From assembly GCA_009103225.1 (NCBI GenBank), contig RHPI01002262.1, positions 124,001-188,000 on the forward strand: DNA of 64,000 nt, read 5' to 3'. Both the position numbers and the translations under genes were made by a program. A model generated the notes under the pieces. The model had not been told where the DNA came from, made no database searches, and saw only the letters and a list, made by a program, of their open reading frames with translations. Shown here piece by piece: positions 46,601-63,749 of this stretch; the stretch's first letter is position 1, and each line of letters starts with the position of its first letter. Source of the DNA: Chlorokybus atmophyticus (taxonomy: Eukaryota; Plantae; Mesostigma and Chlorokybus algae).

Positions 46601-48616
46601 AAGCATATGTAACTACCTAATGCTTACGACGAGCGGACACTCTGTTACTGTTTTGCATATTATCATATCTCAAGACTATCAAGCTAAGTTCTCCACCAGC
46701 ATGACAACCAGCATGACAACTGACATAAGCCTTTCAGGTCTAGCCCAACCTAGATGATCCCAAATTGTCTAAAACTGCCACAAAACCACTTATGCCAGTT
46801 TCGGTTGTCAACTCAGTAGGTGAGTCACCTACTCGTCGTTAGCATAAGTGATTTTGTGCTAGTACGGGCACATTATCTATAAAGCCATGATTGGCCCACC
46901 TGAACAGTGCCAGCAATGGCTATAAGCAAATTGCAAGCTTCAAATCATGCCAGCACTAGCACATGAAGATTATTGTTATGTGCCAGTGTTGGCATGGGCA
47001 AGAGAGGGTGCCAGTCATGTCACGATTTTAACACAAGCGTTTTGATATGCTCATATAGGTAGTGTAACATGTGTAACATAATGTTACACATGTCTATTGT
47101 ACAAGCATATCAAGGGTTTCCTATTGCTGTAACCACTCAACTACAACATCAGCAATGCTAACAATACAAATCAGCTATAATTCTCGCATCAAGTCTCGTT
47201 CAGCTTCGTGCATTTTCCCAAGCCAACTCCGTAAACTCATGATCTGCCTAGACCCACCTAGACCAAAGAACCGCACCTCTTGCACGCAAGCCCTAAGGTC
47301 CAATTGCAAGTCAACATAGCGCGCAGCAGCAGCGGCGGCATAGTGTGCATAGTTGCAGGCAGCTCACCCACTGCAGCTGTCGGGGAGGTGAACAGGAGAG
47401 TGAAAGATGATGCGGTCGATGTTGGTGTGTAGCAGCGCATTCGCACATTGTGCGGAGCCGGAGCATGCGAATTGTAACGCCACCTTAGGCTTGAGCACTT
47501 AGCTCTCACCTAAGAGGGTCATGCACTCTACTTAGTGCACGCACTCACACACATGTGCAAGCACTCGTACTCCGTGTATACACTCACATAAAAGTGTTAG
47601 CACCGTGCATACACTCACACATGCAAGTGTAAGTACGCCCACTGAGTGTACACACTCACATACAAGTGCTACACAAGCACCGGTAGAAATGGCCCCCCAA
47701 CAATTCGGCCTTGCCCTCAACTTATAAATGGAGATCGAGCTATAATTTAATTAGGGATGCGCATATAAGCAACGTATCGAATTTTGCATTTTTTCCAGCT
47801 GCAGCCACAACTTAGTTTGGTATCTAGCTGCCATTAAGGTTAAGTAGTTGGTGTGCATTAAGTTCGATATCCGTTGTTTCTTGAATTCTATAATGTCTAC
47901 ATCCTGTACTAATTTTTGGTTAGATCATGTATCAAGGGGATTAAACCCAATGCGTAATCCAACCCACAATGTTATGGCCGCAGTTTGCGGCAAAATCTTG
48001 AATTTCATAATGTCCACATCATGTACTTATTTTTTGGTTAGATCATGTATTAAGGGGATTAGACTTAATGCAAGTCCAACCAAAAATGTTATAGCCGCAG
48101 TTTGCGGCAAAAACTTAAAGAGTCGTTACGACATAGTCGCAAATCCTACTGCGTAGCGACTTTTTGTGTCGCCGAGTTTCGATCCTGCGCGATAGAAACT
48201 TGTCGGGATGGTGCCACTCGACCTACGACTCAAACATTGACCGATTAAACTACACTGACAGAAGACACACACAGCGCTGTGTTTGTAATTGATATAATCA
48301 ATAAAGCGGCTGCCTCAATTGTATATGTGTATATATGTATATATATATATATATGTATACATGTATATATATATGCTTATATGTATATACATATATAAGC
48401 CGGTAGCCGTATATAAATACGGCTATCGGTACCAGTGTTTTTACTCTTCATACATAATCGTAAAGGGAATTACGGGGACGTAGGTGACTTGAGGATGAAG
48501 AATGTGTTAGACCTGCCGTCCCGTCCAATCGCAGCGCTTGATTACTGGCAGATGTTAGCATTTAATTCCCCGCGTCACCTGTATGTGCAAGGTTGTTCGC
48601 GGTGAGTTGGGGAAGA

Positions 48617-48996
48617 ATGTTTAAGCATGCCAAACAGCCTGCCCATCGGCTGAGCAGCGCAATGGGCTTACCGCTCAGCTCCTCAGCAGTACTAGCCACT
48701 GAGGAGCTGAGCACGTGCACATGCAGCACAAGAAGTGCGGCGTACTGAAAGACCGCATTAGAGCTTACCTCTCTGCCGCTCAAGGCTAACTCAACGACGA
48801 TGTGACAGCTGCCTCCGCCGCCGCTGAAGAGCCAGCCCGCTGAGCTGGCTCTGGCTGCTTCATGGCAGCTAAAGGCCAGCCTTGTACGACCTCCCTCTCC
48901 TTAACCTCCAGCAGGGCGACCTCCACGCCGTCGTCGTCGTCGTTGTTGTTCTCAGCGCCCCTGGCGCTAACATTTGTTGCTCTGAGCGCTATTTGA
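48617..48996 (+). repeat. Split direct repeat A1 of the DIRS-like element
   Basis: Aligns end to end with 58671-59050. Confidence 0.9.
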
Positions 48997-49908
48997 GAAG
49001 TGAGGAGGAGGGGCGGCATGCAGCAGCCCGGCCTAGCTGAAGGCAACCCGTGGTAGCCGTACAAGTATCCTAACGCCTGGGCAAAAACTTGGCTGCTTCC
49101 ACCATCTGAAGGGTTTGAGCTGCAGCGCCTTGGTGCCAGCACGCGAGCGATGGATTTGCAAGCTTTGGGGCAGCGGTTGGGCGTCGGCGTGATCGTGGAC
49201 AGCGCGTATCGCGTGGACATCTTGCGTTAAGTGGACACACAGGCAGGCCATGGGTGTCCCTTGCATGACCATTTTATTGTTGCTTTGGGCCCTCTGAAGG
49301 GGGAACCCCTTGTACGTGTTGCCTTGGAGACGTCAAAATCCCCAGTCCTGTTGCCGCTCAGCTACCTGCAGCACCGACAACACATGGTGGTGGGACGCTT
49401 TTGACAACGTTGTCTCCCAGCGGCGCATGCGAGCACTTGAGAGAAGGACAAACCCCTCGCGCTTAAAACAGGGAGACATTACTTGGGGGGCGCATTTAGT
49501 GGAGACGAGAGACTCGGCCCGCACATGGCAGGTTCTCGGGACTCTCCCCACCGTCACCAGCCCTTGATGCGCAGATGGTCCCCGCTAAGGGGCCGTACCT
49601 ACCCCCGCTCCCCCTTGCGCAGGCGGTCGCGCAGCCCCAACTATCGCAGCCCCGTGCCTTATCCGTACCAGCGCCGAAGCCCTGATCGGGGTCGCAGCAG
49701 GAGCCGCAGCCCCCTGCACCGATGGCAACGTCGCCAATCAAGCGTAGCTGGAGCCCCCCGGCGCGAAGATTGCATCACCCCCCATCTCCGCGGCTGCAGG
49801 CGGAGCAGTCGGAAGCGCCTCTTCTTCCTCAGCAGGCACCAGTTCCGTCCGTGCCAGCACTGAACGTGTCAGCTCCCCTCCCGCCAGCTCTGGCGGTGCC
49901 TCCTTCGC

Positions 49909-51524
49909 CACCTGTAGAAATGAGTTTCCGCAAATCAGGTTGGATCCGCAACTTTGTAATGGACGGAGCCGGACATTATTTGCAAATTTTACGGCAAATC
50001 CGTATATATGTTGTAGCTGCAGCCGGAGTTTTATTGCGACCTGTCACAAGCGGCAATCCGCCGGTGACGATCGTAAGTACTGGATCCCCAACAACGTTAA
50101 GGGTTTGGTGTTTACGTAATTAAGGGTTGAGGCCGTGAGAAAGACTGATGTAAGTCGCAATTACAGTTGTGACCAATTCGTTAACAATGCGTCTTTACTC
50201 CCAAACGCAATTGAAGACTCGACGATAACATTAGAGTGCACTTAGGTTGCATGTTAAAGCTGTACACATCATCATTAATATTGTGACCTGTTCCATCAAC
50301 GATACGAGACTTCATACTAAACAAACTCGGAACGCTAGGATCGATCCATAATTACAAACCATAACAACTTTGACGACCTCATCATTGCCAATTTGCCGGT
50401 TTAACCCCGCGGCCTATTCATGGCTCGCTTGCCTCGCGGCCTGCTAGTAGAAGGCTGCGACTTGCATGTATAATCATTGGTAAACCGTGGTAGCACATGA
50501 GGTAAACATGTAAAGACTTGACCCCAACTCCGCAAACAACCTTGCGCCAGCAAATGACGCAGTGCGCATAATGCAAACATCTGCCGGTGATTACGCGCTG
50601 TAATTGGGACAAAACGGCAAGTCAAACAAAGTCTCCCTCCCCAATTCGCATTTACAGTGGTAAATTACACCTTTATCTTTTTGATACAAATGGTATATAT
50701 GTACATGTATATAAATATATATATATATGTGAATGTATATATATACATACATGTATGTGTGAATATATGTATGTATGTATATATATGTATACATATACTG
50801 GTATACACATACTAGTAGTGCCATTGTATGCAGCTGTTGGTGCATGCGTGATGCATGCATTGCGGCATGTGAGACAATTGAGGCAGCCGCTGTAAAGTTT
50901 ATACACTTTGGTTTATATACCAAACAATCGCGTCACATGTATGTGTTGTCGTCGTAGTCTAGCTGGTCAATGTTTAGGTCCTGTTGTTGCTTGCTAGCCT
51001 CAAAAGCTATTCCGCCCAGGTTCGAAATTCGGCGATTGAGACAAATACGCTGTACTGTGGCTCGTTTGGTTTTTCGCCGCGAACTGCGGGTGTAACATTT
51101 CTGGTTAGAGCACGCATTCAGATTAATCCCCTAACCTCACAGGTTCTTCCGCGCAGGTTCAAAACTCGGCGATAGAGACAAAAAACCCTGTGCTGTGGCC
51201 TTTTTTGTTTTTTCGCCGCGAACTGCGGCCGTAACATTTCTTGTTAGATCAAGCATTAAGATTAATCCCTTTAATACATGATCTAACCAAAAATTAGTAC
51301 GGGATGTGGCTTTTATTAAGGTTTTAAAAAGACGAATACCGAACTTATTGCACATCAGCTAATTGATCTTAATGGCAGTTCGATATTAAACAAAGTTGTG
51401 GCTGCAGCAGCAAAAAGTGCAAAATGGATATGTTGCTTGCATATGGATCCCTGATTAAGTTATAGCAGGATTTCCATTTGAATTGTGGGCAAGGCCGAAC
51501 TGTTGGGGGGCCATTTCTATCGGT
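49909..51524. mobile_element. Non-autonomous CACTA/CMC-like element, family A, inner copy (1616 bp), opposite orientation to the outer copy
   Basis: Ends CACCTGTAGAAATG and CATTTCTATCGGTG with a 3-bp TSD CGC. Confidence 0.9.
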
Positions 51525-52426
51525 GCGCCCACTTTTGTCATGCCATCGCTAGGCGTCGCACCAGGCGCGCCTTGCGACGCTGGCGGACGAAGCGTGCCAG
51601 CGCCGCTGCCGCCTTCGACAACCTCGCGGCGACCCTCGATGTTGAGTTTGGGCTACATGCATGCTCAGAATCCTCAGGCAGCGACTGATGTGGCTGCGTT
51701 GCTAGCAGCGGGTGGCTTGCAGGCGCTGCTATGATGCATGGTGTATGTAAAGCTAAGCGTGGGCCAATGGACGCTCGCGCGCGTGGAGAGTGTGATCGCT
51801 GCCGCGGGCCTCTTTCTTGTTCGCACGCTACCCGCCAACCAGCCCCTGCAGGTCTTGGCCTCTGCCCTAACCTTGGCGAGTGCCAACCCCTCTACAATTG
51901 CACCACCACTAGCGGCGCAGCCGGCCGCTTTCATACCTCACCCCACCGTGCCTCCAGCTGTGGGAGCTAACCCCTCTGCAATCGCACCCCAGCTGACGAC
52001 GCAACCAGCCCCATGCACACCTCACCCCACAGTGCCTACAGCTGCAACGCCTGGGCGCTCGTTCGCGGAGGCGAAAGGCATGAAGCTGGCAGCTGATGGC
52101 ATACATGTCACCCACTTCACGCCCACCTCACACTTTGTGCATGTCCGCAACAACATTGTTAACCGCTTCACAGGAGATGCGGCGCACAAGGGATTGTTGC
52201 AGCAACTACACAAATCGAAGATGATCACGGACACGGAGTACCCGCTCATGGCGGCGTACGTACATGTGCTGCTTGAAAGGTGTTTGTACAAAGAGTTTGA
52301 GGACGTTCCTCTTCACTGTTCGGGGAGGACTGCGCTCGGGCCCTTGAGGCGAGTAAATTGGACCTGTCCATAGAGTACGCGGAGGCGCATCTCATCACCG
52401 AGCTGCTGGACTTCTACACGGAGGTG

Positions 52427-54296
52427 CACACCGATTGACAACAAAGGACCATAAATGGTCCGTACCCTCGAACCGGGATTTTCCCCTGCTAAGTGAATTC
52501 CGTGGACCATGTCTGGTCGGACTGTCATTGACAGTCCGACCATGCATGGTCCAAAACTCACGTGAACGGTCCCATGTTTTTTTGGGGTCGCACCATGTCT
52601 GGTCCGGCCTGTTTACGGTCGCGTCAGGACCAGGTACGAGCCAGTCAGCGGACCAGGGACTTAACAAAAACATTTATTTCACAATCATTACTGGTCCGGC
52701 CAGCGGACCACCGACCGCAATATTTATTTATAAGCATCAGATGTAATGCAAATGACGGAAAAGTGCTCTATCTTGAGCCGGCAGCACCGGCCACGCCCGA
52801 CCTGCGGGGCCGCAGGCTGCAGCGCACGAGGCCGCGGCGTCTTAGAAATGGTTAGTGACGAGATCATGCATCCACCGAGAGTCGAACCCAAGACCTTTGG
52901 AATACAAACACGACACCCTAACCACTAAGCTACATGTGCACGTACCGGTAGGGACGGTGCAGTACTTGCATAATATACTGTACCTACGGCCGCTTGGCGG
53001 CGGCGGCGGAACTGTCGGCGGCGGAAATTGCACAGGAAGTTGGCGTTGTGAATTGACAGGCCCATAGCCAGTGCATGCGCTATCAATGTGCATAGGCTGT
53101 ACCAGTATTAATCCACGGTATCACATTATTTTACGTCATTATTGATGACACAGGCAGCCGCAACTCGGCGGCTGCCAAGGTGTGTAAACTACAATGCTTT
53201 GTTGGGGGCTGTTCATGAGTATGTAACCTTGTTTGGGGTTGTGAATATCCTGGTTGCGTGCGCATACACACACCTACATGTGTACATATGTAAACATTCG
53301 TGTATAAATACATATACACGTTTACATGATATAATTACGAAACGACGAGCATTGCGGCACTAATGTAGGTATTTAATGGCTGATTGGACACCATGTTTGG
53401 TCGGGGCTGTCAATCATTCTGCGGTCTCATACGAGGCTATTTTAATAAGTGATGTGATTTATGTATACTTCTTAACGTATGTTTACATGAGACATACCTT
53501 GTACACGGCTCACCCCATAATACGGCTGATATAGCCATTTAAAATGCGTATAAGATATAGATCCATTTGTGCACACGCTAATATTCATATATTTGTATTA
53601 AATGATATATATTCAATGTTCATATATACGTAGATACTGAGATAAACGCATAGAACATGTTAATGGTGCATGTTCACAAATTTTTGCAAATACACGTACG
53701 GTGCTATGAAGTATGTTAATTGCATAGACAGCCCCTTACAGCTTAGTTGACAGCCGGCCGGCTGTCAATCAGCCGCCGACCATTTGCGGCTATCCACTTG
53801 CGGCTGTCCACGGTGTATAGCCGACAGTCGGTGCGGCTGTCGGCTATACACGCCGTCAATTAACACGTTAAGTGCTCTTGTGCAATCAGGCAGTTGGGCA
53901 AATCATTGTACCTTAAGTAGGTTGTTGCTACGTACTCATGACAGCGGCAGGGCCGCGGTCACTGGTCCGTGCTGCACCGTACATAGAGCGGCGCGGACCG
54001 TGCGGCACCATGTACGGTGCATGCTAATAGGGCCACAGAACTGCGGGACCGCACCTGGTCCGCATTCAAGGGCCAGCGTACAGTACTGGTTCGTGCCGCA
54101 CCATGGATGGTGCGGCACGGACCATGCGTGGTGCGCGTCGCCGCGCCAGCCATTCACGGGCCGCGGGGCCCCGAACGGACCAGGAACGGTCCGTCCTCTG
54201 CAGACCAGGCAGTCCTGGCCCGCGGGGTACGGACTATGCATGGTCCGCGGGGTCCGTGAAAGGACCATGCATGGTCCTTCAACGTCAAGCCGTGTG
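52427..54296. mobile_element. Non-autonomous CACTA/CMC-like element, family B, copy 1 (1870 bp)
   Basis: Imperfect 25-bp TIRs starting CACAC, 3-bp TSD GTG, dense subterminal GGACC/GGTCC repeats. Aligns to 59709-61681. Confidence 0.92.
52867..52939 (-). pseudogene. tRNA-like sequence (73 nt) inside family B copy 1
   Basis: A-box TAGCTTAGTGG and B-box GGTTCGACT at tRNA spacing. The acceptor and anticodon stems are mismatched, so it is probably not a functional tRNA. Confidence 0.65.
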
Positions 54297-55441
54297 GTGC
54301 GGAAGGAGGCAGCCACTCAGCTTGGACAATACCAACACATGACAAGGTACGCGCGTTTGTTGCAGGGTATGCCTTTGTGTCGCGCCTCTCCATTCCTTTA
54401 TCCAACATTCTACTTCAAGCACTGCCTCGGGCAGCTGCACACCACTCATGAGCCTGCAAGCCTCCTTGTGCTGCCCTCGGGGCAAAGCCGAGGAGAGCTT
54501 GTTGCCGTCCAGGCATGGCCTGTGACGTGCTCTGCATGGCCATGCTTAATGTTTATTCACCGGCACAGGTGTTTCCAAACCAACCTTGCCATAGCCGCTC
54601 CCCAATGGTGGAGACAAGGCCAAAGGAGCTGCACCTGCAAGTGGCGTGGTCAACGCCACCAACAATGGCAGCAACAATAACCACAATAGCAAGGAAGCCG
54701 CTGCCGGCAACAACAGAGGGTGGCGTAGATACCAAGACAGGAAGGCGTGAGTAGTATAGGACGGAACTCCTGTGTATAAACCCGTGTGCAATCAATTTTA
54801 TTGTTGTTGTCTTATAGCATGTGATTGCTTGAGATTGGTGCATGAACTGTGTGTTTGCGCACTTGTTTACTGTTGTGTCTCATCCCAGCGTGCACGAGCC
54901 AGTCGCAAGTGCTGCGCTACCATCAGCTGATTCACCTGGCGATGCCTCCGCGGAATGCATGGTCACCAGCACACACTTCTCACTTCCCTTTCAAGCACAA
55001 AGAAGCACGCAGTCAATGCGCACCCAGCAGCTTGCAAGTGCAAACGCACGAGTGCGTAGTGCTGATTCGCTGGCCCCGCACAGCACCCAAGATGAGCACG
55101 AGGACGAAGCAGACTTTGAGGCGTGCCATCAGTTGAATGCGCAGCCTCATGCACACAACGCTGCATTCTGGCAACCAGCACGCGCGTGGCCTGCGCCGCG
55201 GCAGCACCATCCGTGGTCGGAAGAGCTGCAGACAGCGATTGTGCAAGTTGTGCTGGACAAGCTTGAGAGAGTGGGGGATGAGCCCGAGCTGCCTCTATGT
55301 TGTCGGAGGACAGCTGGCGAGTACAGCTCAGCGCTTTCATGCACGATGCCGGTAACTTCTTAGCTGCAGGGCCACGAGCGCACTCGCATGCATGGCAGCT
55401 ATGGCTGCACGCTACCAAGCACCCAATGGCGTCGCAAGTGA

Positions 55442-57288
55442 TTGAGTTGGCTCAGCTCTGGCTACCCCTTGCATTTTCAAGGGACTGCAACAGCTCCGGA
55501 GCAGAAGTTACGACAGGTGCAGTTGCTGCTGTGCTCAGAAGGTTGGTCGCATGCTCGCATCCGTGCTGCCCTGCGCGCATCAGCGCCTCCGCCTATTGCA
55601 TTGCGCAATCGTGCCTCGTTGGAAGAGCACAAGGAGTTTGTGGTGGAGGAGCTTACCACGCTGGTGCGCACGGGGGTTATCACCCTGGTGCCAACCAATG
55701 CAGCAAAGCAGGTGATCTCGGGCATGGGGGTGATAGTTATGAGCAAGAAACGTTTGGTGGTGGATCTTCGCTACGTCAACCTCTTCCTCGCACACATACC
55801 TTTCCACTACGAGCGCTTAACGGACATGTTACACTACACCCAAGGAGCATGGCAAGCTTTGACTTGAAAAGCGGATAACACCACATTCCCATCCGCGCAC
55901 GTGACACCAATTCCTTGTGCGTCGCATTTGAAGATCAGGTGTTCAAATGGAACGTGCTCCCCTTTGGACTGAATCAAGCACGGTATGCATTTACAATGGT
56001 GCAGCTTGGCATTCACAAGCCATTGCGAAGTGCGGGCATTGGCACCCTCAGCTACATAGACGACATGCACATGGCGCATCGCAACAAAGGGCATCTACTA
56101 TGGCGTATTGAGCTGATCATGCAGCTCTGTGCGGCACTGCGCGAGTTCTTTGGACTGCCTAAGCGCAATGCTTTCCCCACCATGCGCTTGCAGCTGCTGG
56201 GGCTCATTGTGGACTCGCAAGTGGGCGCGTTCTAGGTGCCCAAGGCCAAGCTTGAGGACCTCTACATGCTGCTTAACGACACGCTGGCGCGCCCAATGCT
56301 CACCAACAGAATGCTGGCGCGCGTAGTAGGCAAGCTAATCAGCCTACGCTTGGCCGTTCCTCCGGTGCTGCTATTTGCTAGGTCGCTCATGGAAGTAATA
56401 AACTACGCCAACACTTGGTAAGCACCGTTTGCAGCGCCGGCCATCACAAATGAGTTCATTGCATGTTTGCGATCAGCCTTGCGGACGTACACAGCCAGCG
56501 CTTGGTGGAGACCGCCTAGCTCCATTCTGCTGCGCGCAGATGCATCAGGAGAGAAGGGTTGGGGTGCGGTGACACCATGGGGCCACGTGCAGGGCAACTT
56601 CACGCCAGTTGAGCTGGAGCTGTCCTCGGCAGTCAAGAAAGGGCTGGCGTATGTTACCGTGGTCATAGAGGCAGCTCTCCGCTTCCCAAACCTGCGCCAC
56701 ACAACCGTCATGCTTGAAGGCGACTGTCAACCAGCCCTACAAGCTCTCTCCAAGCTGGTCTCCCCTTCGCCTTACCTAAGTGCCCTGCTCTATAAGCTGT
56801 GGGGAGTGCTCAGAGCCAGGGATCTCCACTTGCGTTGCTTGTGTGTGTGTGTGTGTGTGTGTGAAGCAACGCAAGTGGAGATCCGCGCGAGCGGCTGCAA
56901 TTGGAGGATTGGCTCTCCAAAACCGCGGATGCGGGCGATTGGGCCCTGCGTGCAACAACGTGTGATAGCGCGATGGGGTGCACCGACTGTAGACATGTTT
57001 GCTTTGGAGATCAATACCGTTGCTCCCGCCTTCTTCTCCGCTTGTAACAGCCCGGGCTCGAGTGGCAACGCTCTCACCTCCGGTTTGGACTGCGCCCCGC
57101 GCGGCCTCTTGTGGGTCCTCCCGCCCTTGGCCCTGCTGGGCACGGCAGTACGGTTGGTTGCGCACGCTCAACGTGATTGCGTATTGGTTGTGCCACAATG
57201 GGCACAGAAACCTTGGTGGCCACAAGTTCTGGGGCTACCTATTCATGAGTCCATGCTACTTCATGCACACCCAGCTTTGTTTGTGTAG
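55442..57288 (+). pseudogene. DIRS-type reverse transcriptase, RNase H and DAM-like methyltransferase domains, disrupted
   Basis: KRLVVDLRYVN, DLKSGYHHI, LPFGL and YIDD (RT); LRADAS...LEGDCQ (RH); VDMFA...WVLPP...LVVPQWAQKPWWP (MT-like). Frameshift near 55860 and stops at 56233 and 56419. Confidence 0.92.
56820..56884. repeat. Perfect 21-bp inverted repeat enclosing a (GT)n loop
   Basis: ggatctccacttgcgttgctt, 23 nt of GT repeat, then aagcaacgcaagtggagatcc. Confidence 0.95.
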
Positions 57289-58484
57289 GGTAGGAGAGTG
57301 CCTGCGCACATCCCTAGCCCAGGCAAATACCCGCATATGGCATTCCATTTAGTGTTTACCTGATTGGACGGGCACAAGTAGTGCCGCACCATGGCCTCAG
57401 TTCGCCACAAACCATGTTGTTGTAGCTTTGCCATGGTCATGCCTTGTCTTTGACCATGCTGCACACCGCCTCATCTGAAACTATGCAGCGTCACATGTGG
57501 CTTGTCAATGCCGCTAGCCAGCATGTGTTTGCGTAGCGCCTTGCTGGCCGCGGCAGCTTGTAGAGGTCCGTCCAGCCACCTCCTTTTGCTTCGATGCATG
57601 CCATGGAAAACATAACCCGTGTCAAGCTCCATGTTGTGCTGGCGCGCACACTCTACAAATTGCCCCACCTCCTTGTGCATGTCAAAAGCAATGCCACCAT
57701 GCGTGAGTGTGATGGCCCGGGGCAGCATGTCCTTCCAGTTCTTGAGCACCCCTGTGCGGACTTGTAAGCCCGCTTCTGTTTGATGTAATTGGTTTAGCTG
57801 CAGCTGGCACGCTTCGCCGCCTTTCTGCCAACTACACCACAGATACCTAAACAGTAAGTGGTCCCGCATAGGAAGCAGCACTTCAGGCCCGCTTGTGGCC
57901 TGCACTTGTGCGTCCAAGTGAGTTGAAAGCGTGCGAATGTCGCTCACTATCAGTGGCTCAGCTTGCTGAGGTTGTACACCAGCCTCGACAACCCCTCGTT
58001 GATACGCTTTTACGTATTCTAAAACTTCGGGTGCTCGGCAAGGATTGTCAGCAGCCAGAATGCTATCCCATGCGCTTCCCCTCCCGATTCTAACAAAGCC
58101 GTTGGTCAAGCTGGTCAGCATATTGTGAAGGGACTTAACAGCTGATTGCTGTCTTCCGGTGGCGTTAGCGCATCGGGCACGAACACAGTGCTTGGGCAAC
58201 CAGTACGAATGGACGTACGCCCGCACATAATGTGGGCCCACATTGGTGACGCTCTCGCTGTGCTGCTGCACGTGCTGCGCAAACTCTCGCCACACGGTGC
58301 ACCACGCGCGACGATGCCTCTCGCCAGTACCCGGCTGCCTACATGTGAATAAGCAATCGTATGAAGAAAGCGCTGCTGCATGGCTGTGTTGACAGTCGCA
58401 GGGGCATAATTTGCATGGCCGAGGTCTGCTACTTGCAAGCTGCAACCATAGTGCTCCACTACTTGCCCAAACCCAGCCCTGCAA
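57261..58484 (-). pseudogene. Tyrosine recombinase of the DIRS-like element, antisense to RT
   Basis: NPCRAPEV...AEPL, RDHLLFRYLWCSWQKGGE, TLHSFR*GG, GLW and VRHY. One internal TGA after HSFR; Lys at the usual first catalytic Arg position. Confidence 0.88.
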
Positions 58485-58504
58485 ACAAATTTAGCAGTAA
58501 CATT

Positions 58505-59375
58505 GGGCTGACCGTGCTGTGTTATCCCTCTGAGGATGAGCAGCTCAACGGCTGCTCTGTACTGCCAAATTTGTGTGAGCTGAGCAACGTTGATACACAC
58601 AATAAAAAGCATGCAACAACAAAGTTATTAACGTCTATTGCTAGATGGCTACATCAAGCAGCGACTCTGCATGTTCAAGCATGCTGAACAGCCTGCCCAT
58701 TGGCTGAGCATCGCAATGGGCCTACCGCTTAGCTTCTCAGCAACAATAGCCGTTGAGGAGCTGAGCACGTGCACATGCAGCACTAGAAGTGCGGCGTATT
58801 GAAAGACCGCACAAGAGCTTACCTCTCTACCGCCCAGGGCTGGCTCAACGGCAATGTGACAAATGCCTCCGCCGCCGCTGAAGAGCCAGCCCGCTGAGCT
58901 AGCTCAGGCTGCTTCATGGCAGCCAAAGGCCAGCCTTGTACAACCTCCCTCTCCATAACCTCCAGCAGGGCAATCTCCCCGCCGCCGTCGTTGTTGTTGT
59001 TGTTCACAGCGCCCTTGGCGCTAACATTTGTTGCTTTGAACGCTATTTGACCCACCCACCCAACCCGAAGGGCCTGGGGGGCTCGCGCGAACCAACATGA
59101 TCGCCCATCAGCCGTCCGTTTATGACCACAAACGGACGGCTGTGCGCACGCGACACGTGTCTGGGTGCCACCGTTCGATCAGTTCCGTTGAACTAGTCAC
59201 GGGGCTGACCGTGCTGTATTGTCCCTCTGAGGATGAGCAACTCAACGGCTGCTCTGTACTGCTATATCTGTGTGAGCTGAGCAACGTTGATAAACTCAAT
59301 AAAAAGCATGCAACAATAATGTTATTAACGTCTATTGCTAGATGGCTACATCAAGCAGCGACTCTACATGTTTAA
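58505..59375 (+). repeat. B1-A2-spacer-B2 terminal repeat block of the DIRS-like element
   Basis: B1 58505-58678, A2 58671-59050, B2 59202-59375. B1 and A2 overlap by ATGTTCAA. Confidence 0.9.
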
Positions 59376-59708
59376 CGCATGTGCTAGTACAAATCATAAC
59401 GCATGCAAGTAGCAGCCTTTTCTACATGTACTTGCTTGCTTCGCGGCTTGCTACTAGCAAGCCGCAGGGCAAGCCATAGATAGGCCGCAGGGTTGAACTT
59501 GGCAATGATGAGGTCATACAATCATTAGGGTTTATAACTGTGTGTAAAGTAATAATCGTAACACACACCTTGATAAGCCTTAACAAGGTATGTGTTACTG
59601 AGTATATATGCTCGTACTATTCATGGAACCGATCACAACGTACATGATTATCACAAATTGGGATAAATTGTGACAGACCTCACTCATGGTAGTGTCTTTT
59701 ACTACCAT

Positions 59709-61681
59709 CACACCGATTGACGTCAAAGGACCATAAATGGTCCGTACCCTCGAACCGGGATTTTCCCCTGCTAAGTGAATTCCGTGGACCATGTCTGGTC
59801 GGACTGTCATTGACAGTCCGACCATGCATGGTCCAAAACTCACGTGAACGGTCCCATGTTTTTTTGGGGTCGCATCATGTCTGGTCCGGCCTGTTTACGG
59901 TCGCGTCAGGACCAGGTACGAGCCAGTTAGCGGACCAGGGACTTAACAAAAACATTTAGTTTAAGAATCATTACTGGTCCGGCTAGCGGACCATTGACCG
60001 CAATATTTATTCATAAGCATCAGATGTAATGCAAATGACGGAAAAGTGCTCTATCTTGAGCCGGCAGCACCGGCCACGCCCAACCTGCGGGACCGCAGGC
60101 TGCAGCGCACGAGGCCGCGGCGTCTTAGAAATGATTAATGAAGAACGCATGCATCTACCGAGAGTCGAACCCAAGACCTTTGGAATACAAACACGACACC
60201 CTAACCACTAAGCTACATGTGCACGTACGGTAGGGACGGTGCAGTGTTTGCATCATAGACTGTACCGACGGCCGCTTGGCGACTGTCGGCGGCGGAAACT
60301 GCACAGGAAGTCGGCATTGTGAATTGACAGGCCCATAGGCAGTGCATGTGCTATCAATGTGCATCGGCTGTACCAGTATTAATTAACGGTATTACGTTAT
60401 TTTAGGTTATTATTGATGACACAGACAGCCGCAACTCGGCAGCTGCCAAGGTTTGTAAAATACAATGCTTTGTTGGGGGCTGTCCACGAGTATGTAACCT
60501 TGTTAGGGGTTGTCAACATCCTGCTTGCGTGCGCATACACACATCCACATGTGTATATATGTAAGCATTCGTGTATATAGTATTTATATCATGTAAACGT
60601 ATATATACGTTTACATGATATAAACATTAATTATATTTATATAATGTAAAGATTGATGATATTTATATAATGTAAACGTATATATACGTTTACATGATAT
60701 AAATATCAAAACCGCATTGCGGCACCAACGTAGGTATTTACTAGCTGGTTGGACACAATGCTTGGTCGGGGCTGTCAATCATTCTGCGGTTTCATAAGAG
60801 GCTATTATAATAAGTGACATCATTTATGTATACTTCTTGTACGTATTTTTATATGAGACATACCTTATAGGCGGCTCAACCTAAATACTACTGATATAAC
60901 CATTAACCTGCGCTTCTATGCGTGTAAGATTAGATTCATTTGTGCACACGCTCTCATATACATATATATATATATATATATATGTAGATTGTATGATATA
61001 TACAATGCATTAACGTATATACATGTATAATGTTCATACATACGTAGATACTTAAACTTAGATAAATGCATAAAATTTGTTAATGGTGCGTGTCCACAAA
61101 TTTTTGCAACTACACGTACGGTACTATGAAGTATGTTGATTGCATAGACAGCCCCTTACAGCTTAATTGACAGCCGGCCGGCTGTCAATCAGCCGCCGAC
61201 CATTTGCGGCTATCCACTTGCGGCTGGCCACGGGTGTATAGCCGACAGTCGGTGCGGCTTGTCAATTAACGCGTTAAGTGCACTTGTGCAATCAGGCATT
61301 TAGGCAGTCTATTGTACCTTACGTAGGTTGTTGCTACCTACTCATGATAGCGGCAGGGCCGCGGTCACTGGTCCGTGCCGCACCGCACATGATGCGGCGC
61401 GGAACGTGCGGCACTATGTACGGTGCGTGCTAGTACAATACTGTAGGGCCACAGGACTGCGGGACCGCACCTGGTCCGCATTCCAGGGCCAGCGTACATT
61501 ACTGGTCCGTGCCGCACCATGGATGGTGCGGCACGGACCATGCGTAGTGCGCGTCGCCGCGCCAGCCATTCACGGGCCGCGGGGCCCCGAATGGACCAGG
61601 AACGGTCCGTCCCCTGCGGACCAGGCAGTCCTGGCCCGTGGGATACGGATCATGCATGGTCCTGCAACGTCAAGCCGTGTG
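59709..61681. mobile_element. Non-autonomous CACTA/CMC-like element, family B, copy 2 (1973 bp)
   Basis: CACAC...GTGTG termini and a 3-bp TSD CAT. The empty site is visible in the sister LTR (ttactaccatagcc at about 62090-62103). Confidence 0.93.
60150..60222 (-). pseudogene. tRNA-like sequence (73 nt) inside family B copy 2
   Basis: Near-identical to 52867-52939. Confidence 0.65.
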
Positions 61682-63749
61682 CATAGCCTAGTGGTCGGGC
61701 CCCAATTGTTACAATGGTATCGGAGCTTGACGTCTCAAGTTCAATTCCCGTAGGGGACTGAGGCGGATCCAGGGCAATAACAAAACATTTGGGCGGCTTG
61801 CCCTAGGCTGGGCGCGGGATCACGACCTGCGCGCCGAGCCAGTTCAACCTAAAGTCGCGTGAGCGGTCGCGCTGCGATGGCAGGTCGCGCGGTGAGGCCG
61901 TTCGATCGGTCAGGGCCGTTCGATCGGTCGGATCCAACAGGCCGCGGGCAGACTGATCATGGTACGGTCGAGATTACGGCGACGTGGGCTAGTGCCTCAT
62001 TGGATTATAAGGAATTTTTGAGTTGAATTCGGGAGGAATATCACAAATTGAGATAAATTGTGACAGACCTCACTCATGGTAGTGTTGTTTACTACCATAG
62101 CCTAGTGGTCAAGCCCCAATTGTCACAATGATGATGTGTATAGCTTTAGCATGCAGCGTCTATGCATTTTCAAAATGTCGCCGCGTCCTCAATTGCGTTG
62201 GGGAGTACAGGCGCATTGTTAATGAGTTGGTTACAACTGTTATCACGATTTACACATGCCTTTCTCACGACTTAAACCTTTAATTACGTCAAAGAAAAGA
62301 ATCTTTGACATTGTTCAGGATCTAGTGCTTACAATTGTCACCAGCGGAGTGCCGTTTGTGACAGGTTGTATCAATATTTCGGCTACAGTCATAACATATA
62401 TATGGATCCGCCGTGAAGTTTACAAAATCCGCAAGTTATGTCCAACTTCGTCCATTACAAAGTTGCAGATCCAGCCTGACTTGCCGAAACCCTTTTCTAC
62501 CGATGAAGGACACATGTCCTCACCTTGTGGTTGAAGAGCTTTGGCACCCCCGTGAACGGCCTCTCACCCGAACACCCCACGTGAAGCCCCACACGAGGAA
62601 GCACGGCAAGGCAATGTAGACCCAAGTCTCTAATGCCTTGCCTACTGAGCATACTCACTCATTTATATACCCCTGGTGCCTTATCTAGTCACTTAAGGGT
62701 GGTGGGTGTTTCCACCAATGGTGCCTCGTTCGGACCCTAATGTAATTTAAGGCCAACCATCTTGTGACAAGCACTCTTGCACTTGCCCTTATTAGGCTTA
62801 CACCAATCACCTTGAAGGATATCATACCCCTAAGTATGAGCAAGCAATGAAATTGTACTATAATCTCATGGTATTGGCCACACGGTTTTGTGGCCACAGA
62901 TTGTAGATATCAGTCTTTGTGACATCCGTATTGCAGTCTACAGTATCAGCATACTTCTGTGCGATATCCGCATCTGCCTCTTTTAGCACTTTCTAGTTAA
63001 GTGCACATGTAACATCCACAGTGTCTTCCACAATGTGGACATTTGTTGTGATGGTATCCACACCCTTGTGTGCAATATCAATGCTCGACTCTTCTGATAT
63101 TCTCCAGACATAAGTCTCTGTAATATCAAAATCGCAGCTGTGATATGAACATTCGTGTGTAAGATATCCACAGTCATGTACCAGATGTCAACATACTTGT
63201 CTGCTTAGATGTCTTTGTCTACATAATTGACACATGTGTATAATAAACATTTGTGGCTAACTAGCCCACATCAGTGTCTGTCTCATGGACACCTTCATAC
63301 AAGATGTCAACATCTACAATGTAGAGAGGTGTAGCTAATTGTTCCACACCCATCTCTACCTTGTAGTAGCAAGCATACATGCTTGTTGGTTGTCTATGTC
63401 ACATATGTCCAAGCTCTTAGAGCAAACTGCTAGCCGAGTTACATGAATTGTGTGGATAGGTGGCACCCATCCACACATGTGGGTGGGAAGACCCATTATG
63501 AAGCTTGTAACCACCTCATGCAACATGCCAGTTGTTAAGATACACATGAAAGAGAATGCAGCTGTGAAAAAGAACAAGTGTTGCTATCTGCAAATGGTGG
63601 CAAACCTGGATTGAATTCAGACGATGATGCCATTGAGACACTGCGCTCCCATTCAAATCACTTTCATCTTAGATAAAAGCTTTTGAAAGCAGTGCTTACA
63701 ATAAATACCTCACCTGATTTGGTTAGCTGAGAGAAAAAGAAGACACAGT

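What the first reader, a model, noticed from the sequence alone, without database searches (positions are those of the whole stretch)
48617..59375. Split-direct-repeat retroelement exposing its recombinase crossover core (ATGTTTAA)
ATGTTTAA is present at the left end (48617-48624) and the right end (59368-59375), and ATGTTCAA at the internal B1/A2 junction (58671-58678). The paralogous empty site in the inner family A copy reads ATGTTTAC (reverse complement of 50502-50509). This is what is expected if a circular intermediate with a B-A junction was integrated by a tyrosine recombinase into a matching target core. It gives a testable target-site preference for a PAT-like element in a streptophyte-type genome.
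Basis: partly seen in the sequence, partly recalled or inferred. Interest (0 to 1): 0.75.

Follow-up and report, generated by a model that had tools for sequence, protein, structure and literature searches.

The report
Recombinase retrotransposon ends share eight-base core
A decayed jumping gene of an already known tyrosine-recombinase type in a green alga has the same eight bases at both ends and at its internal repeat junction, while a sister copy of the insertion site has them once; this fits the standard model of recombinase-mediated insertion, but only one copy could be examined.

Summary
ATGTTTAA lies at 48617-48624 and 59368-59375, and ATGTTCAA at 58671-58678. These are exactly the points where repeat A (380 bp) starts and repeat B (174 bp) ends. 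An inverted paralogue of the host transposon carries a single ATGTTTAC at the matching place.

The element is a dead PAT-type (DIRS-order) retrotransposon. It has split direct repeats (A1...B1A2-spacer-B2), an RT-RNase H-methyltransferase-like pol on the + strand, and a convergent Cre/XerC-type tyrosine recombinase on the - strand. Two later TIR transposons are nested inside it; without them it measures 7.27 kb.

Target and B/A junction are alike only within the octamer; the 24 bases on each side match at chance level. This fits conservative recombination within a shared core, which is the published model for DIRS1-like elements (3-bp core) and Cryptons (4-6 bp).

It is n=1. No other copy of the family could be fetched, so neither the 8-bp requirement nor a target preference is shown. 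A distant relative shares only about 3 nt.

The scan had already noted this kind of element on other DNA of the same genome, once with an "ATG" core. Verdict: a new member of a known kind, with a possibly longer core.

The parts
48617..48624 (+). Left terminal octamer ATGTTTAA (first 8 bases of A1)
48617..48996 (+). Repeat A1 (380 bp), 89% identical to A2
49686..52370 (+). Gag-position ORF, named by position only. With the nested F' removed, 49686-49908 and 51529-51731 join into one frame of about 355 codons running on through 51735-52370, with one in-frame stop. No family match.
49909..51525 (-). F': later nested copy of the TIR transposon family F, with a 3-bp TSD (CGC at 49906-49908 and 51526-51528). 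It carries the paralogous empty site.
50502..50509 (-). Paralogous empty site: a single ATGTTTAC
52427..54296 (+). G1: later nested TIR transposon (TIR CACACSGMTTGACGT), with a 3-bp TSD (GTG at 52424-52426 and 54297-54299). Its paralogue G2 is at 59709-61681.
55282..57285 (+). pol with RT (DLKSG, LPFGL, YIDD), RNase H (DAS..GWG) and a DIRS-type methyltransferase-like tail (VDMFA..LPP..PWWP). It has three in-frame stops, at 55876-55878, 56233-56235 and 56419-56421.
57264..58490 (-). Tyrosine recombinase, convergent with pol and overlapping its end by 22 bp. It has an ALOG-type N-terminal domain, GNP-like DNP, K, HSFR and HGLW...RHY motifs. It is dead: an in-frame stop at 57471-57473 and Lys in place of catalytic Arg-I (AAA at 57822-57824).
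58505..58678 (+). Repeat B1 (174 bp), 93% identical to B2
58671..58678 (+). Internal B1/A2 junction octamer ATGTTCAA, the stand-in for the circle junction
58671..59050 (+). Repeat A2
59051..59201 (+). 151-bp spacer between A2 and B2, with no counterpart after A1
59202..59375 (+). Repeat B2, ending in the right terminal octamer ATGTTTAA (59368-59375)
47677..48616 (+). Left part of the host transposon copy F1 (TIR CACCGGTAGAAATGG; TSD AAG)
59376..62505 (+). Right part of host copy F1, itself interrupted by G2 and a small repeated element

Best explanation
The interval 48617-59375 is one old, dead copy of a PAT-type (DIRS-order) tyrosine-recombinase retrotransposon. Its layout is A1, gag-position ORF, RT/RNase H/MT-like pol (+ strand), recombinase (- strand), B1A2, a 151-bp spacer, B2.

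Inferred life cycle, following the published DIRS/PAT model: an RNA running from A1 to B2 is reverse-transcribed, and the internal B1/A2 junction serves as the template that restores a closed B-A junction. The element's Cre-like recombinase then carries out conservative strand exchange between the junction octamer ATGTTYAA and an identical genomic octamer. One octamer in the circle plus one in the target give one at each end of the insert. There is no true target-site duplication. Eight bases is the size of a canonical tyrosine-recombinase overlap region.

Shown here: the repeat anatomy, the domains, the 8-bp block of identity, and the single copy in the paralogous empty site.

Inferred: the circle, the strand exchange, and that all 8 bases are needed.
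For: - A starts and B ends with the octamer, so B1 and A2 overlap by exactly 8 bases.
- The host transposon F1 aligns with its paralogue F' across the site, and F' has a single ATGTTTAC.
- Identity between junction and target stops at the octamer: the flanks match at 5-6 of 24 positions, which is chance level.
- A >=7/8 match at a fixed position has p about 4e-4 to 6e-4.
- The recombinase is real. There are 215 relatives at E<=1e-3, the best at 3e-17. Its family profile hits XerC-like (1e-11), Cre (1e-9) and the ALOG protein LSH3 (2.5e-8). The K, H-x-x-R and W...Y motifs are present.
- pol has RVT_1 and YIDD, and its tail aligns with the RH/MT-like part of an intact pol in L001 (2e-14).
- Published model: in DIRS1-like elements a 3-bp circle junction recombines with an identical genomic sequence and leaves no TSD (PMC3266345, PMC7192593). 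In Cryptons, 4-6-bp terminal repeats are taken as recombination substrates, and YR sites have 6-8-bp spacers (PMC3212892).
Against: - There is a single copy. No second member of the family was found in the window or in the protein libraries, where the closest relative is at most 35% identical.
- The internal junction differs from the termini at one base (C against T).
- The empty site is a 73-80% paralogue whose eighth base is C, and F1 lacks about 6-8 bases just left of the octamer compared with F'.
- A young distant relative (L005) shares only about 3 nt (TGT) between its ends and junction. Another note of this scan reports an 'ATG' core in a different family of this genome.
- For DIRS-1, mainly linear single-stranded cDNA was detected experimentally (PMC7192593).
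Confidence: 0.62

Rival explanations
1. The recombinase needs only a short core, such as ATG or ATGT, like the 3-bp junction of DIRS1-like elements. The other 4-5 matching bases at this one site are luck or a weak preference, so the octamer overstates the crossover core.
For: DIRS1-like elements use trinucleotides (PMC3266345). The relative L005 shares only (T/A)TGT. An earlier scan note (s1-190763) describes an 'ATG' core in another family of this genome. This finding was picked out of many such elements in the genome, so selection inflates its apparent significance.
Against: Five extra matches by chance have p about 1e-3. The block of identity ends sharply at 8 bases, the size of a canonical YR overlap region (PMC3212892).
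Confidence: 0.22
2. Integration was not catalysed at the octamer by the recombinase. Instead, a linear cDNA whose ends carried the junction sequence was joined to a chromosomal break by host microhomology-mediated repair, leaving the same 8-bp repeat.
For: DIRS-1 cDNA is predominantly linear and single-stranded (PMC7192593). About 6-8 bases are missing from F1 just left of the octamer compared with F', as can happen with repair-mediated joining.
Against: The element encodes a recombinase with the full catalytic motif set in its family. Both element ends are complete to the base and coincide with the repeat boundaries. The missing bases may simply be divergence between paralogues that are about 75% alike.
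Confidence: 0.1
3. It is an ordinary 8-bp target-site duplication made by staggered cleavage, and the similar octamer at the B1/A2 junction is a coincidence.
For: Read alone, two identical 8-mers flanking an insert with one in the empty site look like a TSD.
Against: The internal junction holds 8 extra bases that match at 7/8 (p about 4e-4). The A1/A2 and B1/B2 alignments include the octamer. No DDE integrase or endonuclease is encoded.
Confidence: 0.03

Closest known systems
PAT group of the DIRS order (Pat1, TOC3/TOC1, Kangaroo)
   Same: Split direct repeats A1...B1A2B2, an RT-RNase H-MT-like pol, a tyrosine recombinase in place of an integrase, and no protease or DDE integrase (PMC4157794, PMC3266345).
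   Different: Very divergent proteins: the recombinase is at most 35% identical to anything in 1.8 billion representatives. There is a 151-bp spacer between A2 and B2. The shared terminal/junction block is 8 bp.
Kangaroo (Volvox carteri)
   Same: Green-lineage PAT element with the recombinase gene inverted relative to pol (PMC4157794).
   Different: In Kangaroo the internal repeats are described as lying between MT and YR (PMC4157794). Here B1A2 lies beyond the recombinase, next to B2, as in the 'novel' Daphnia pulex PAT form of that paper.
DIRS1-like elements (3-bp circular junction model)
   Same: The sequence shared by the element ends and the internal junction is also present once in the target, and integration leaves no TSD (PMC3266345, PMC7192593).
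   Different: DIRS1-like elements have inverted terminal repeats plus internal complementary regions, and a 3-bp core. Here there are split direct repeats and an 8-bp block.
Crypton DNA transposons
   Same: Tyrosine-recombinase elements flanked by short direct repeats (4-6 bp) that are read as recombination substrates or microhomology, not as TSDs (PMC3212892, PMC13465315).
   Different: Cryptons have no RT and no split repeats.
Phage lambda Int and Cre-type site-specific recombination
   Same: A Cre/XerC-like catalytic domain. One core in the circle plus one in the target gives one at each junction. An overlap region of 6-8 bp.
   Different: The target shows no recognisable pair of inverted binding arms around the octamer. 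The only dyad (TGTTCA/TGAACA around AGCATGC, 58672-58690) is short and within chance.

Membership tests
DIRS order (tyrosine-recombinase retrotransposons) | Encodes a reverse transcriptase with RNase H | tested here: met
   RVT_1 at E 9e-6, below the Pfam cut-off because the gene is broken. DLKSG, LPFGL, YIDD and DAS..GWG motifs are present. tblastn to the intact pol of L001 gives 5e-40, and that pol hits RVT_1 at 1.8e-11.
DIRS order (tyrosine-recombinase retrotransposons) | Encodes a tyrosine recombinase instead of a DDE integrase or endonuclease | tested here: met
   The family profile hits XerC-like at 1e-11 and Cre at 1e-9. K, HxxR and W..Y are present. Arg-I is mutated to Lys and there is one stop, so this copy is dead. 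No integrase or endonuclease family was found.
PAT group | Split direct repeats A1 ... B1A2B2 | tested here: met
   A1/A2 are 380 bp at 89% and B1/B2 are 174 bp at 93%, in the order A1-internal-B1A2-spacer-B2.
PAT group | Methyltransferase-like domain after RNase H (absent in Ngaro/VIPER) | tested here: inconclusive
   The tail VDMFA...LPP...PWWP aligns with the same region of the L001 pol (2e-14). No Pfam model or solved structure matched it, so the name rests on motif resemblance recalled from the literature.
PAT group | Integration without a true TSD: the terminal sequence is shared with the internal junction | tested here: met
   One octamer at each end, one at B1/A2 and one in the paralogous empty site. 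Single copy only.
Kangaroo | Inverted recombinase gene | tested here: met
   The YR runs on the - strand from 58490 to 57264 and pol on the + strand to 57285.
Kangaroo | Internal repeats located between MT and YR (as described in PMC4157794) | tested here: not met
   B1A2 (58505-59050) lies beyond the YR gene, adjacent to B2.
DIRS1-like | Inverted terminal repeats plus internal complementary regions | tested here: not met
   The terminal repeats are direct. No terminal inverted repeats of the element were found.
Ngaro | Split direct repeats, no MT-like domain, and YR in the same orientation as pol | tested here: not met
   An MT-like tail is present and the YR is inverted.

The most novel reading that the evidence does not exclude
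This Chlorokybus PAT-type family really requires identity across a full 8-bp overlap region (ATGTTYAA). If so, it would be a sequence-specific eukaryotic retrotransposon with a defined att-like core, unlike the 3-bp cores reported for DIRS1-like elements. Its intact relatives would then offer a recombinase and site pair from the plant lineage that could be tested directly.
Probability: 0.2. Interest if true: 0.55.

Novelty: new member of a known kind. Interest (0 to 1): 0.3.

Why it matters
How DIRS/PAT retrotransposons choose and enter their targets has hardly been tested by experiment. The published evidence is mostly a shared trinucleotide. A copy whose empty site can be read from a paralogue, and whose shared block is 8 bases (the size of a classical tyrosine-recombinase overlap region), gives a concrete hypothesis that can be falsified for this family. 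As it stands, it is one decayed copy of a known kind of element, so it mainly serves annotation and the design of a genome-wide check.

Tried and rejected
- Other copies in the window: none for A, B, pol or YR.
- Word-based protein search with the recombinase: no hit.
- Full representative search: only distant relatives, at most 35% identity, so there is no same-family copy. Their clusters carry no organism names.
- Scans for related loci: viral contigs gave nothing. Metagenome contigs gave 13 distant loci.
  - L001 has the same convergent pol/YR layout but no detectable split repeats.
  - L005 has clean split repeats, but only a ~3-nt shared core and an ambiguous empty site.
  - L007 and L008 belong to other families.
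- Recombinase-binding dyad at the junction: only a 6-bp pair, within chance.
- Extended similarity between target and junction (GCATG with a 1-nt shift): not above chance.
- The Kangaroo and PAT primary papers are not held.
- Solved-structure searches with single pol pieces: no hit.
- pol and YR were searched piece by piece, by reference. A read-through with X at the stops was used only in a local script. The nest-free 7.27-kb version was built only in scratch, to obtain ORF coordinates.
Full report
**Observation.** ATGTTTAA occurs at 48617-48624 and 59368-59375, and ATGTTCAA at 58671-58678. Self-comparison shows two direct-repeat pairs: A1 48617-48996 with A2 58671-59050 (380 bp, 89%), and B1 58505-58678 with B2 59202-59375 (174 bp, 93%). 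A begins with the octamer and B ends with it, so B1 and A2 overlap by exactly these 8 bases. After A2 comes a 151-bp spacer (59051-59201) that has no counterpart after A1.

**The empty site.** The flanks belong to one copy, F1, of a ~1.7-kb TIR transposon. F1 spans 47677-48616 plus 59376-62505, has the TIR CACCNGTAGAAATG and a 3-bp TSD (AAG). A second, inverted copy, F', lies at 49909-51525 with TSD CGC. F1 with the insert removed aligns with F' along its whole length. Where F1 has the insert bracketed by two ATGTTTAA, F' has a single ATGTTTAC (reverse complement of 50502-50509).

F' sits inside the element. It is a later nested insertion and interrupts a gag-position ORF, which closes up when F' is removed. 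A second TIR element, G1 (52427-54296, TSD GTG), is also nested, and its paralogue G2 (59709-61681, TSD CAT) sits in F1. Without the two nests the element is 7266 bp.

**What it encodes.**
- On the + strand, 55282-57285 is one frame with three stops. It has the RT motifs DLKSG, LPFGL and YIDD, an RNase H DAS..GWG motif, and a tail VDMFA..LPP..PWWP. This tail aligns with the RH/MT-like part of an intact 846-aa pol in metagenome locus L001 (2e-14; overall tblastn 5e-40).
- On the - strand, 58490-57264 encodes a tyrosine recombinase that converges on pol and overlaps it by 22 bp.
- The word search found no relative of the recombinase. The full representative search found 215 relatives at E<=1e-3, the best at 3e-17 and none above 35% identity.
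- A profile of the window's protein with 16 relatives hits XerC-like (1e-11), Cre (1e-9) and the ALOG protein LSH3 (2.5e-8). Eight members match Phage_integrase and five match ALOG. The ESM Atlas neighbours are eukaryotic recombinases of the DUF3504/Phage_integrase kind.
- This copy is dead. It has a stop right after HSFR (57471-57473), and Lys (AAA, 57822-57824) at the column that aligns with catalytic Arg-I of Cre and XerC.

**Is the octamer a TSD or a shared core?** Under a plain TSD the internal B1/A2 junction should not contain the duplicated sequence, yet it matches at 7 of 8 positions (p = 3.8e-4; 6e-4 empirically). Counting copies also fits a conservative event: one in the junction plus one in the target give the two copies seen at the ends. 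Identity between the junction and the reconstructed target is confined to the octamer, because the 24 bases on either side match at 5-6 positions, which is chance. A GCATG just right of the octamer recurs with a 1-nt shift, but that is not significant. The single C/T difference at the internal junction is expected from the 7-11% decay of the repeats.

**Mechanism.** The best reading is the published DIRS/PAT model: reverse transcription, restoration of a closed B-A junction using B1/A2 as template, then recombinase-mediated exchange between the junction core and an identical genomic sequence, with no TSD. For DIRS1-like elements the literature gives a 3-bp core (PMC3266345, PMC7192593). For Cryptons it gives 4-6-bp terminal repeats, and it notes that YR sites have 6-8-bp spacers (PMC3212892, PMC13465315). 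The 8-bp block here has the size of a canonical overlap region. The circle and the strand exchange are inferred, not shown.

**Limits.**
- This is one copy.
- L001 shares the convergent pol/YR layout but shows no split repeats.
- L005 is a young 4.2-kb element bounded by split repeats (A 100%, B 99.5% identical). It has a 600-aa YR ORF and no RT was detected. It shares only (T/A)TGT between ends and junction, and its paralogous empty site lacks 7 bases, so it is ambiguous.
- So the rival that only about 3-4 bases are required stays open, as does repair-mediated joining of a linear cDNA.

**Classification.** This is a PAT group element of the DIRS order. It has the inverted recombinase of Kangaroo, but its internal repeats lie beyond the recombinase, next to B2. 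PMC4157794 describes that arrangement for a 'novel' Daphnia PAT form, not for Kangaroo. It is not DIRS1-like (no inverted terminal repeats) and not Ngaro (an MT-like tail is present and the YR is inverted).

**Earlier notes of the scan.** These report several PAT/kangaroo-type elements on other pieces of the same genome, one with an 'ATG' core, and name the genome as Chlorokybus. I did not verify the organism. One note covers this same stretch as a nest of transposons, which my junction analysis supports for the four elements I resolved.

**Verdict.** This is a new member of a known kind, and the only possibly new aspect is a longer core.

Noticed in passing
window 47677-62505 and 49909-51525: Family F is a ~1.6-1.7-kb non-autonomous TIR transposon (TIR CACCNGTAGAAATG, 3-bp TSDs AAG and CGC, so CACTA-like). 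It has internal tandem duplications (47879-48002/47996-48119 and 50994-51130/51131-51269) and a TA-rich microsatellite. One copy hosts the retroelement and another is nested inside it, so the family was active both before and after the retroelement arrived.
   Followed up: partly
window 52427-54296 and 59709-61681: Family G is a ~1.9-kb TIR element (TIR CACACSGMTTGACGT) with 3-bp TSDs (GTG, CAT). The two copies are 82-93% identical; one lies in the retroelement and one in F1.
   Followed up: partly
window 59646-59708, 61682-62120: A small palindromic, MITE-like sequence appears twice around G2, including a 63-bp direct repeat (59646-59708 = 62036-62098, 94%). Its exact boundaries were not resolved.
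   Followed up: no
window 58672-58690: A dyad TGTTCA / TGAACA flanks AGCATGC at the start of A2. In A1 the arms read TGTTTA / CAAACA, so one C:G pair has become T:A on both arms. It is too short to be significant, but it could be a recombinase-binding dyad.
   Followed up: partly
L005:8864-13086: A metagenome/WGS contig (VFQN01000681.1) carries a young 4.2-kb element with split direct repeats (A 118 bp at 100%, B 191 bp at 99.5%). It has one 600-aa ORF containing a related tyrosine recombinase, and no RT was detected. It lies in a ~6.9-kb tandem repeat whose second unit serves as an empty site.
   Followed up: partly
L001:710-4897: A metagenome contig (Ga0316223_1005755) has an intact 846-aa RT-RH-MT-like pol and a 516-aa recombinase ORF in the same tail-to-tail arrangement as the window's element.
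   Followed up: partly
window 56870-56900 (within pol): A (TGTG)n microsatellite, translated as CVCVCVCV, sits between the RNase H and MT-like parts of pol. It is probably a post-insertion expansion.
   Followed up: no
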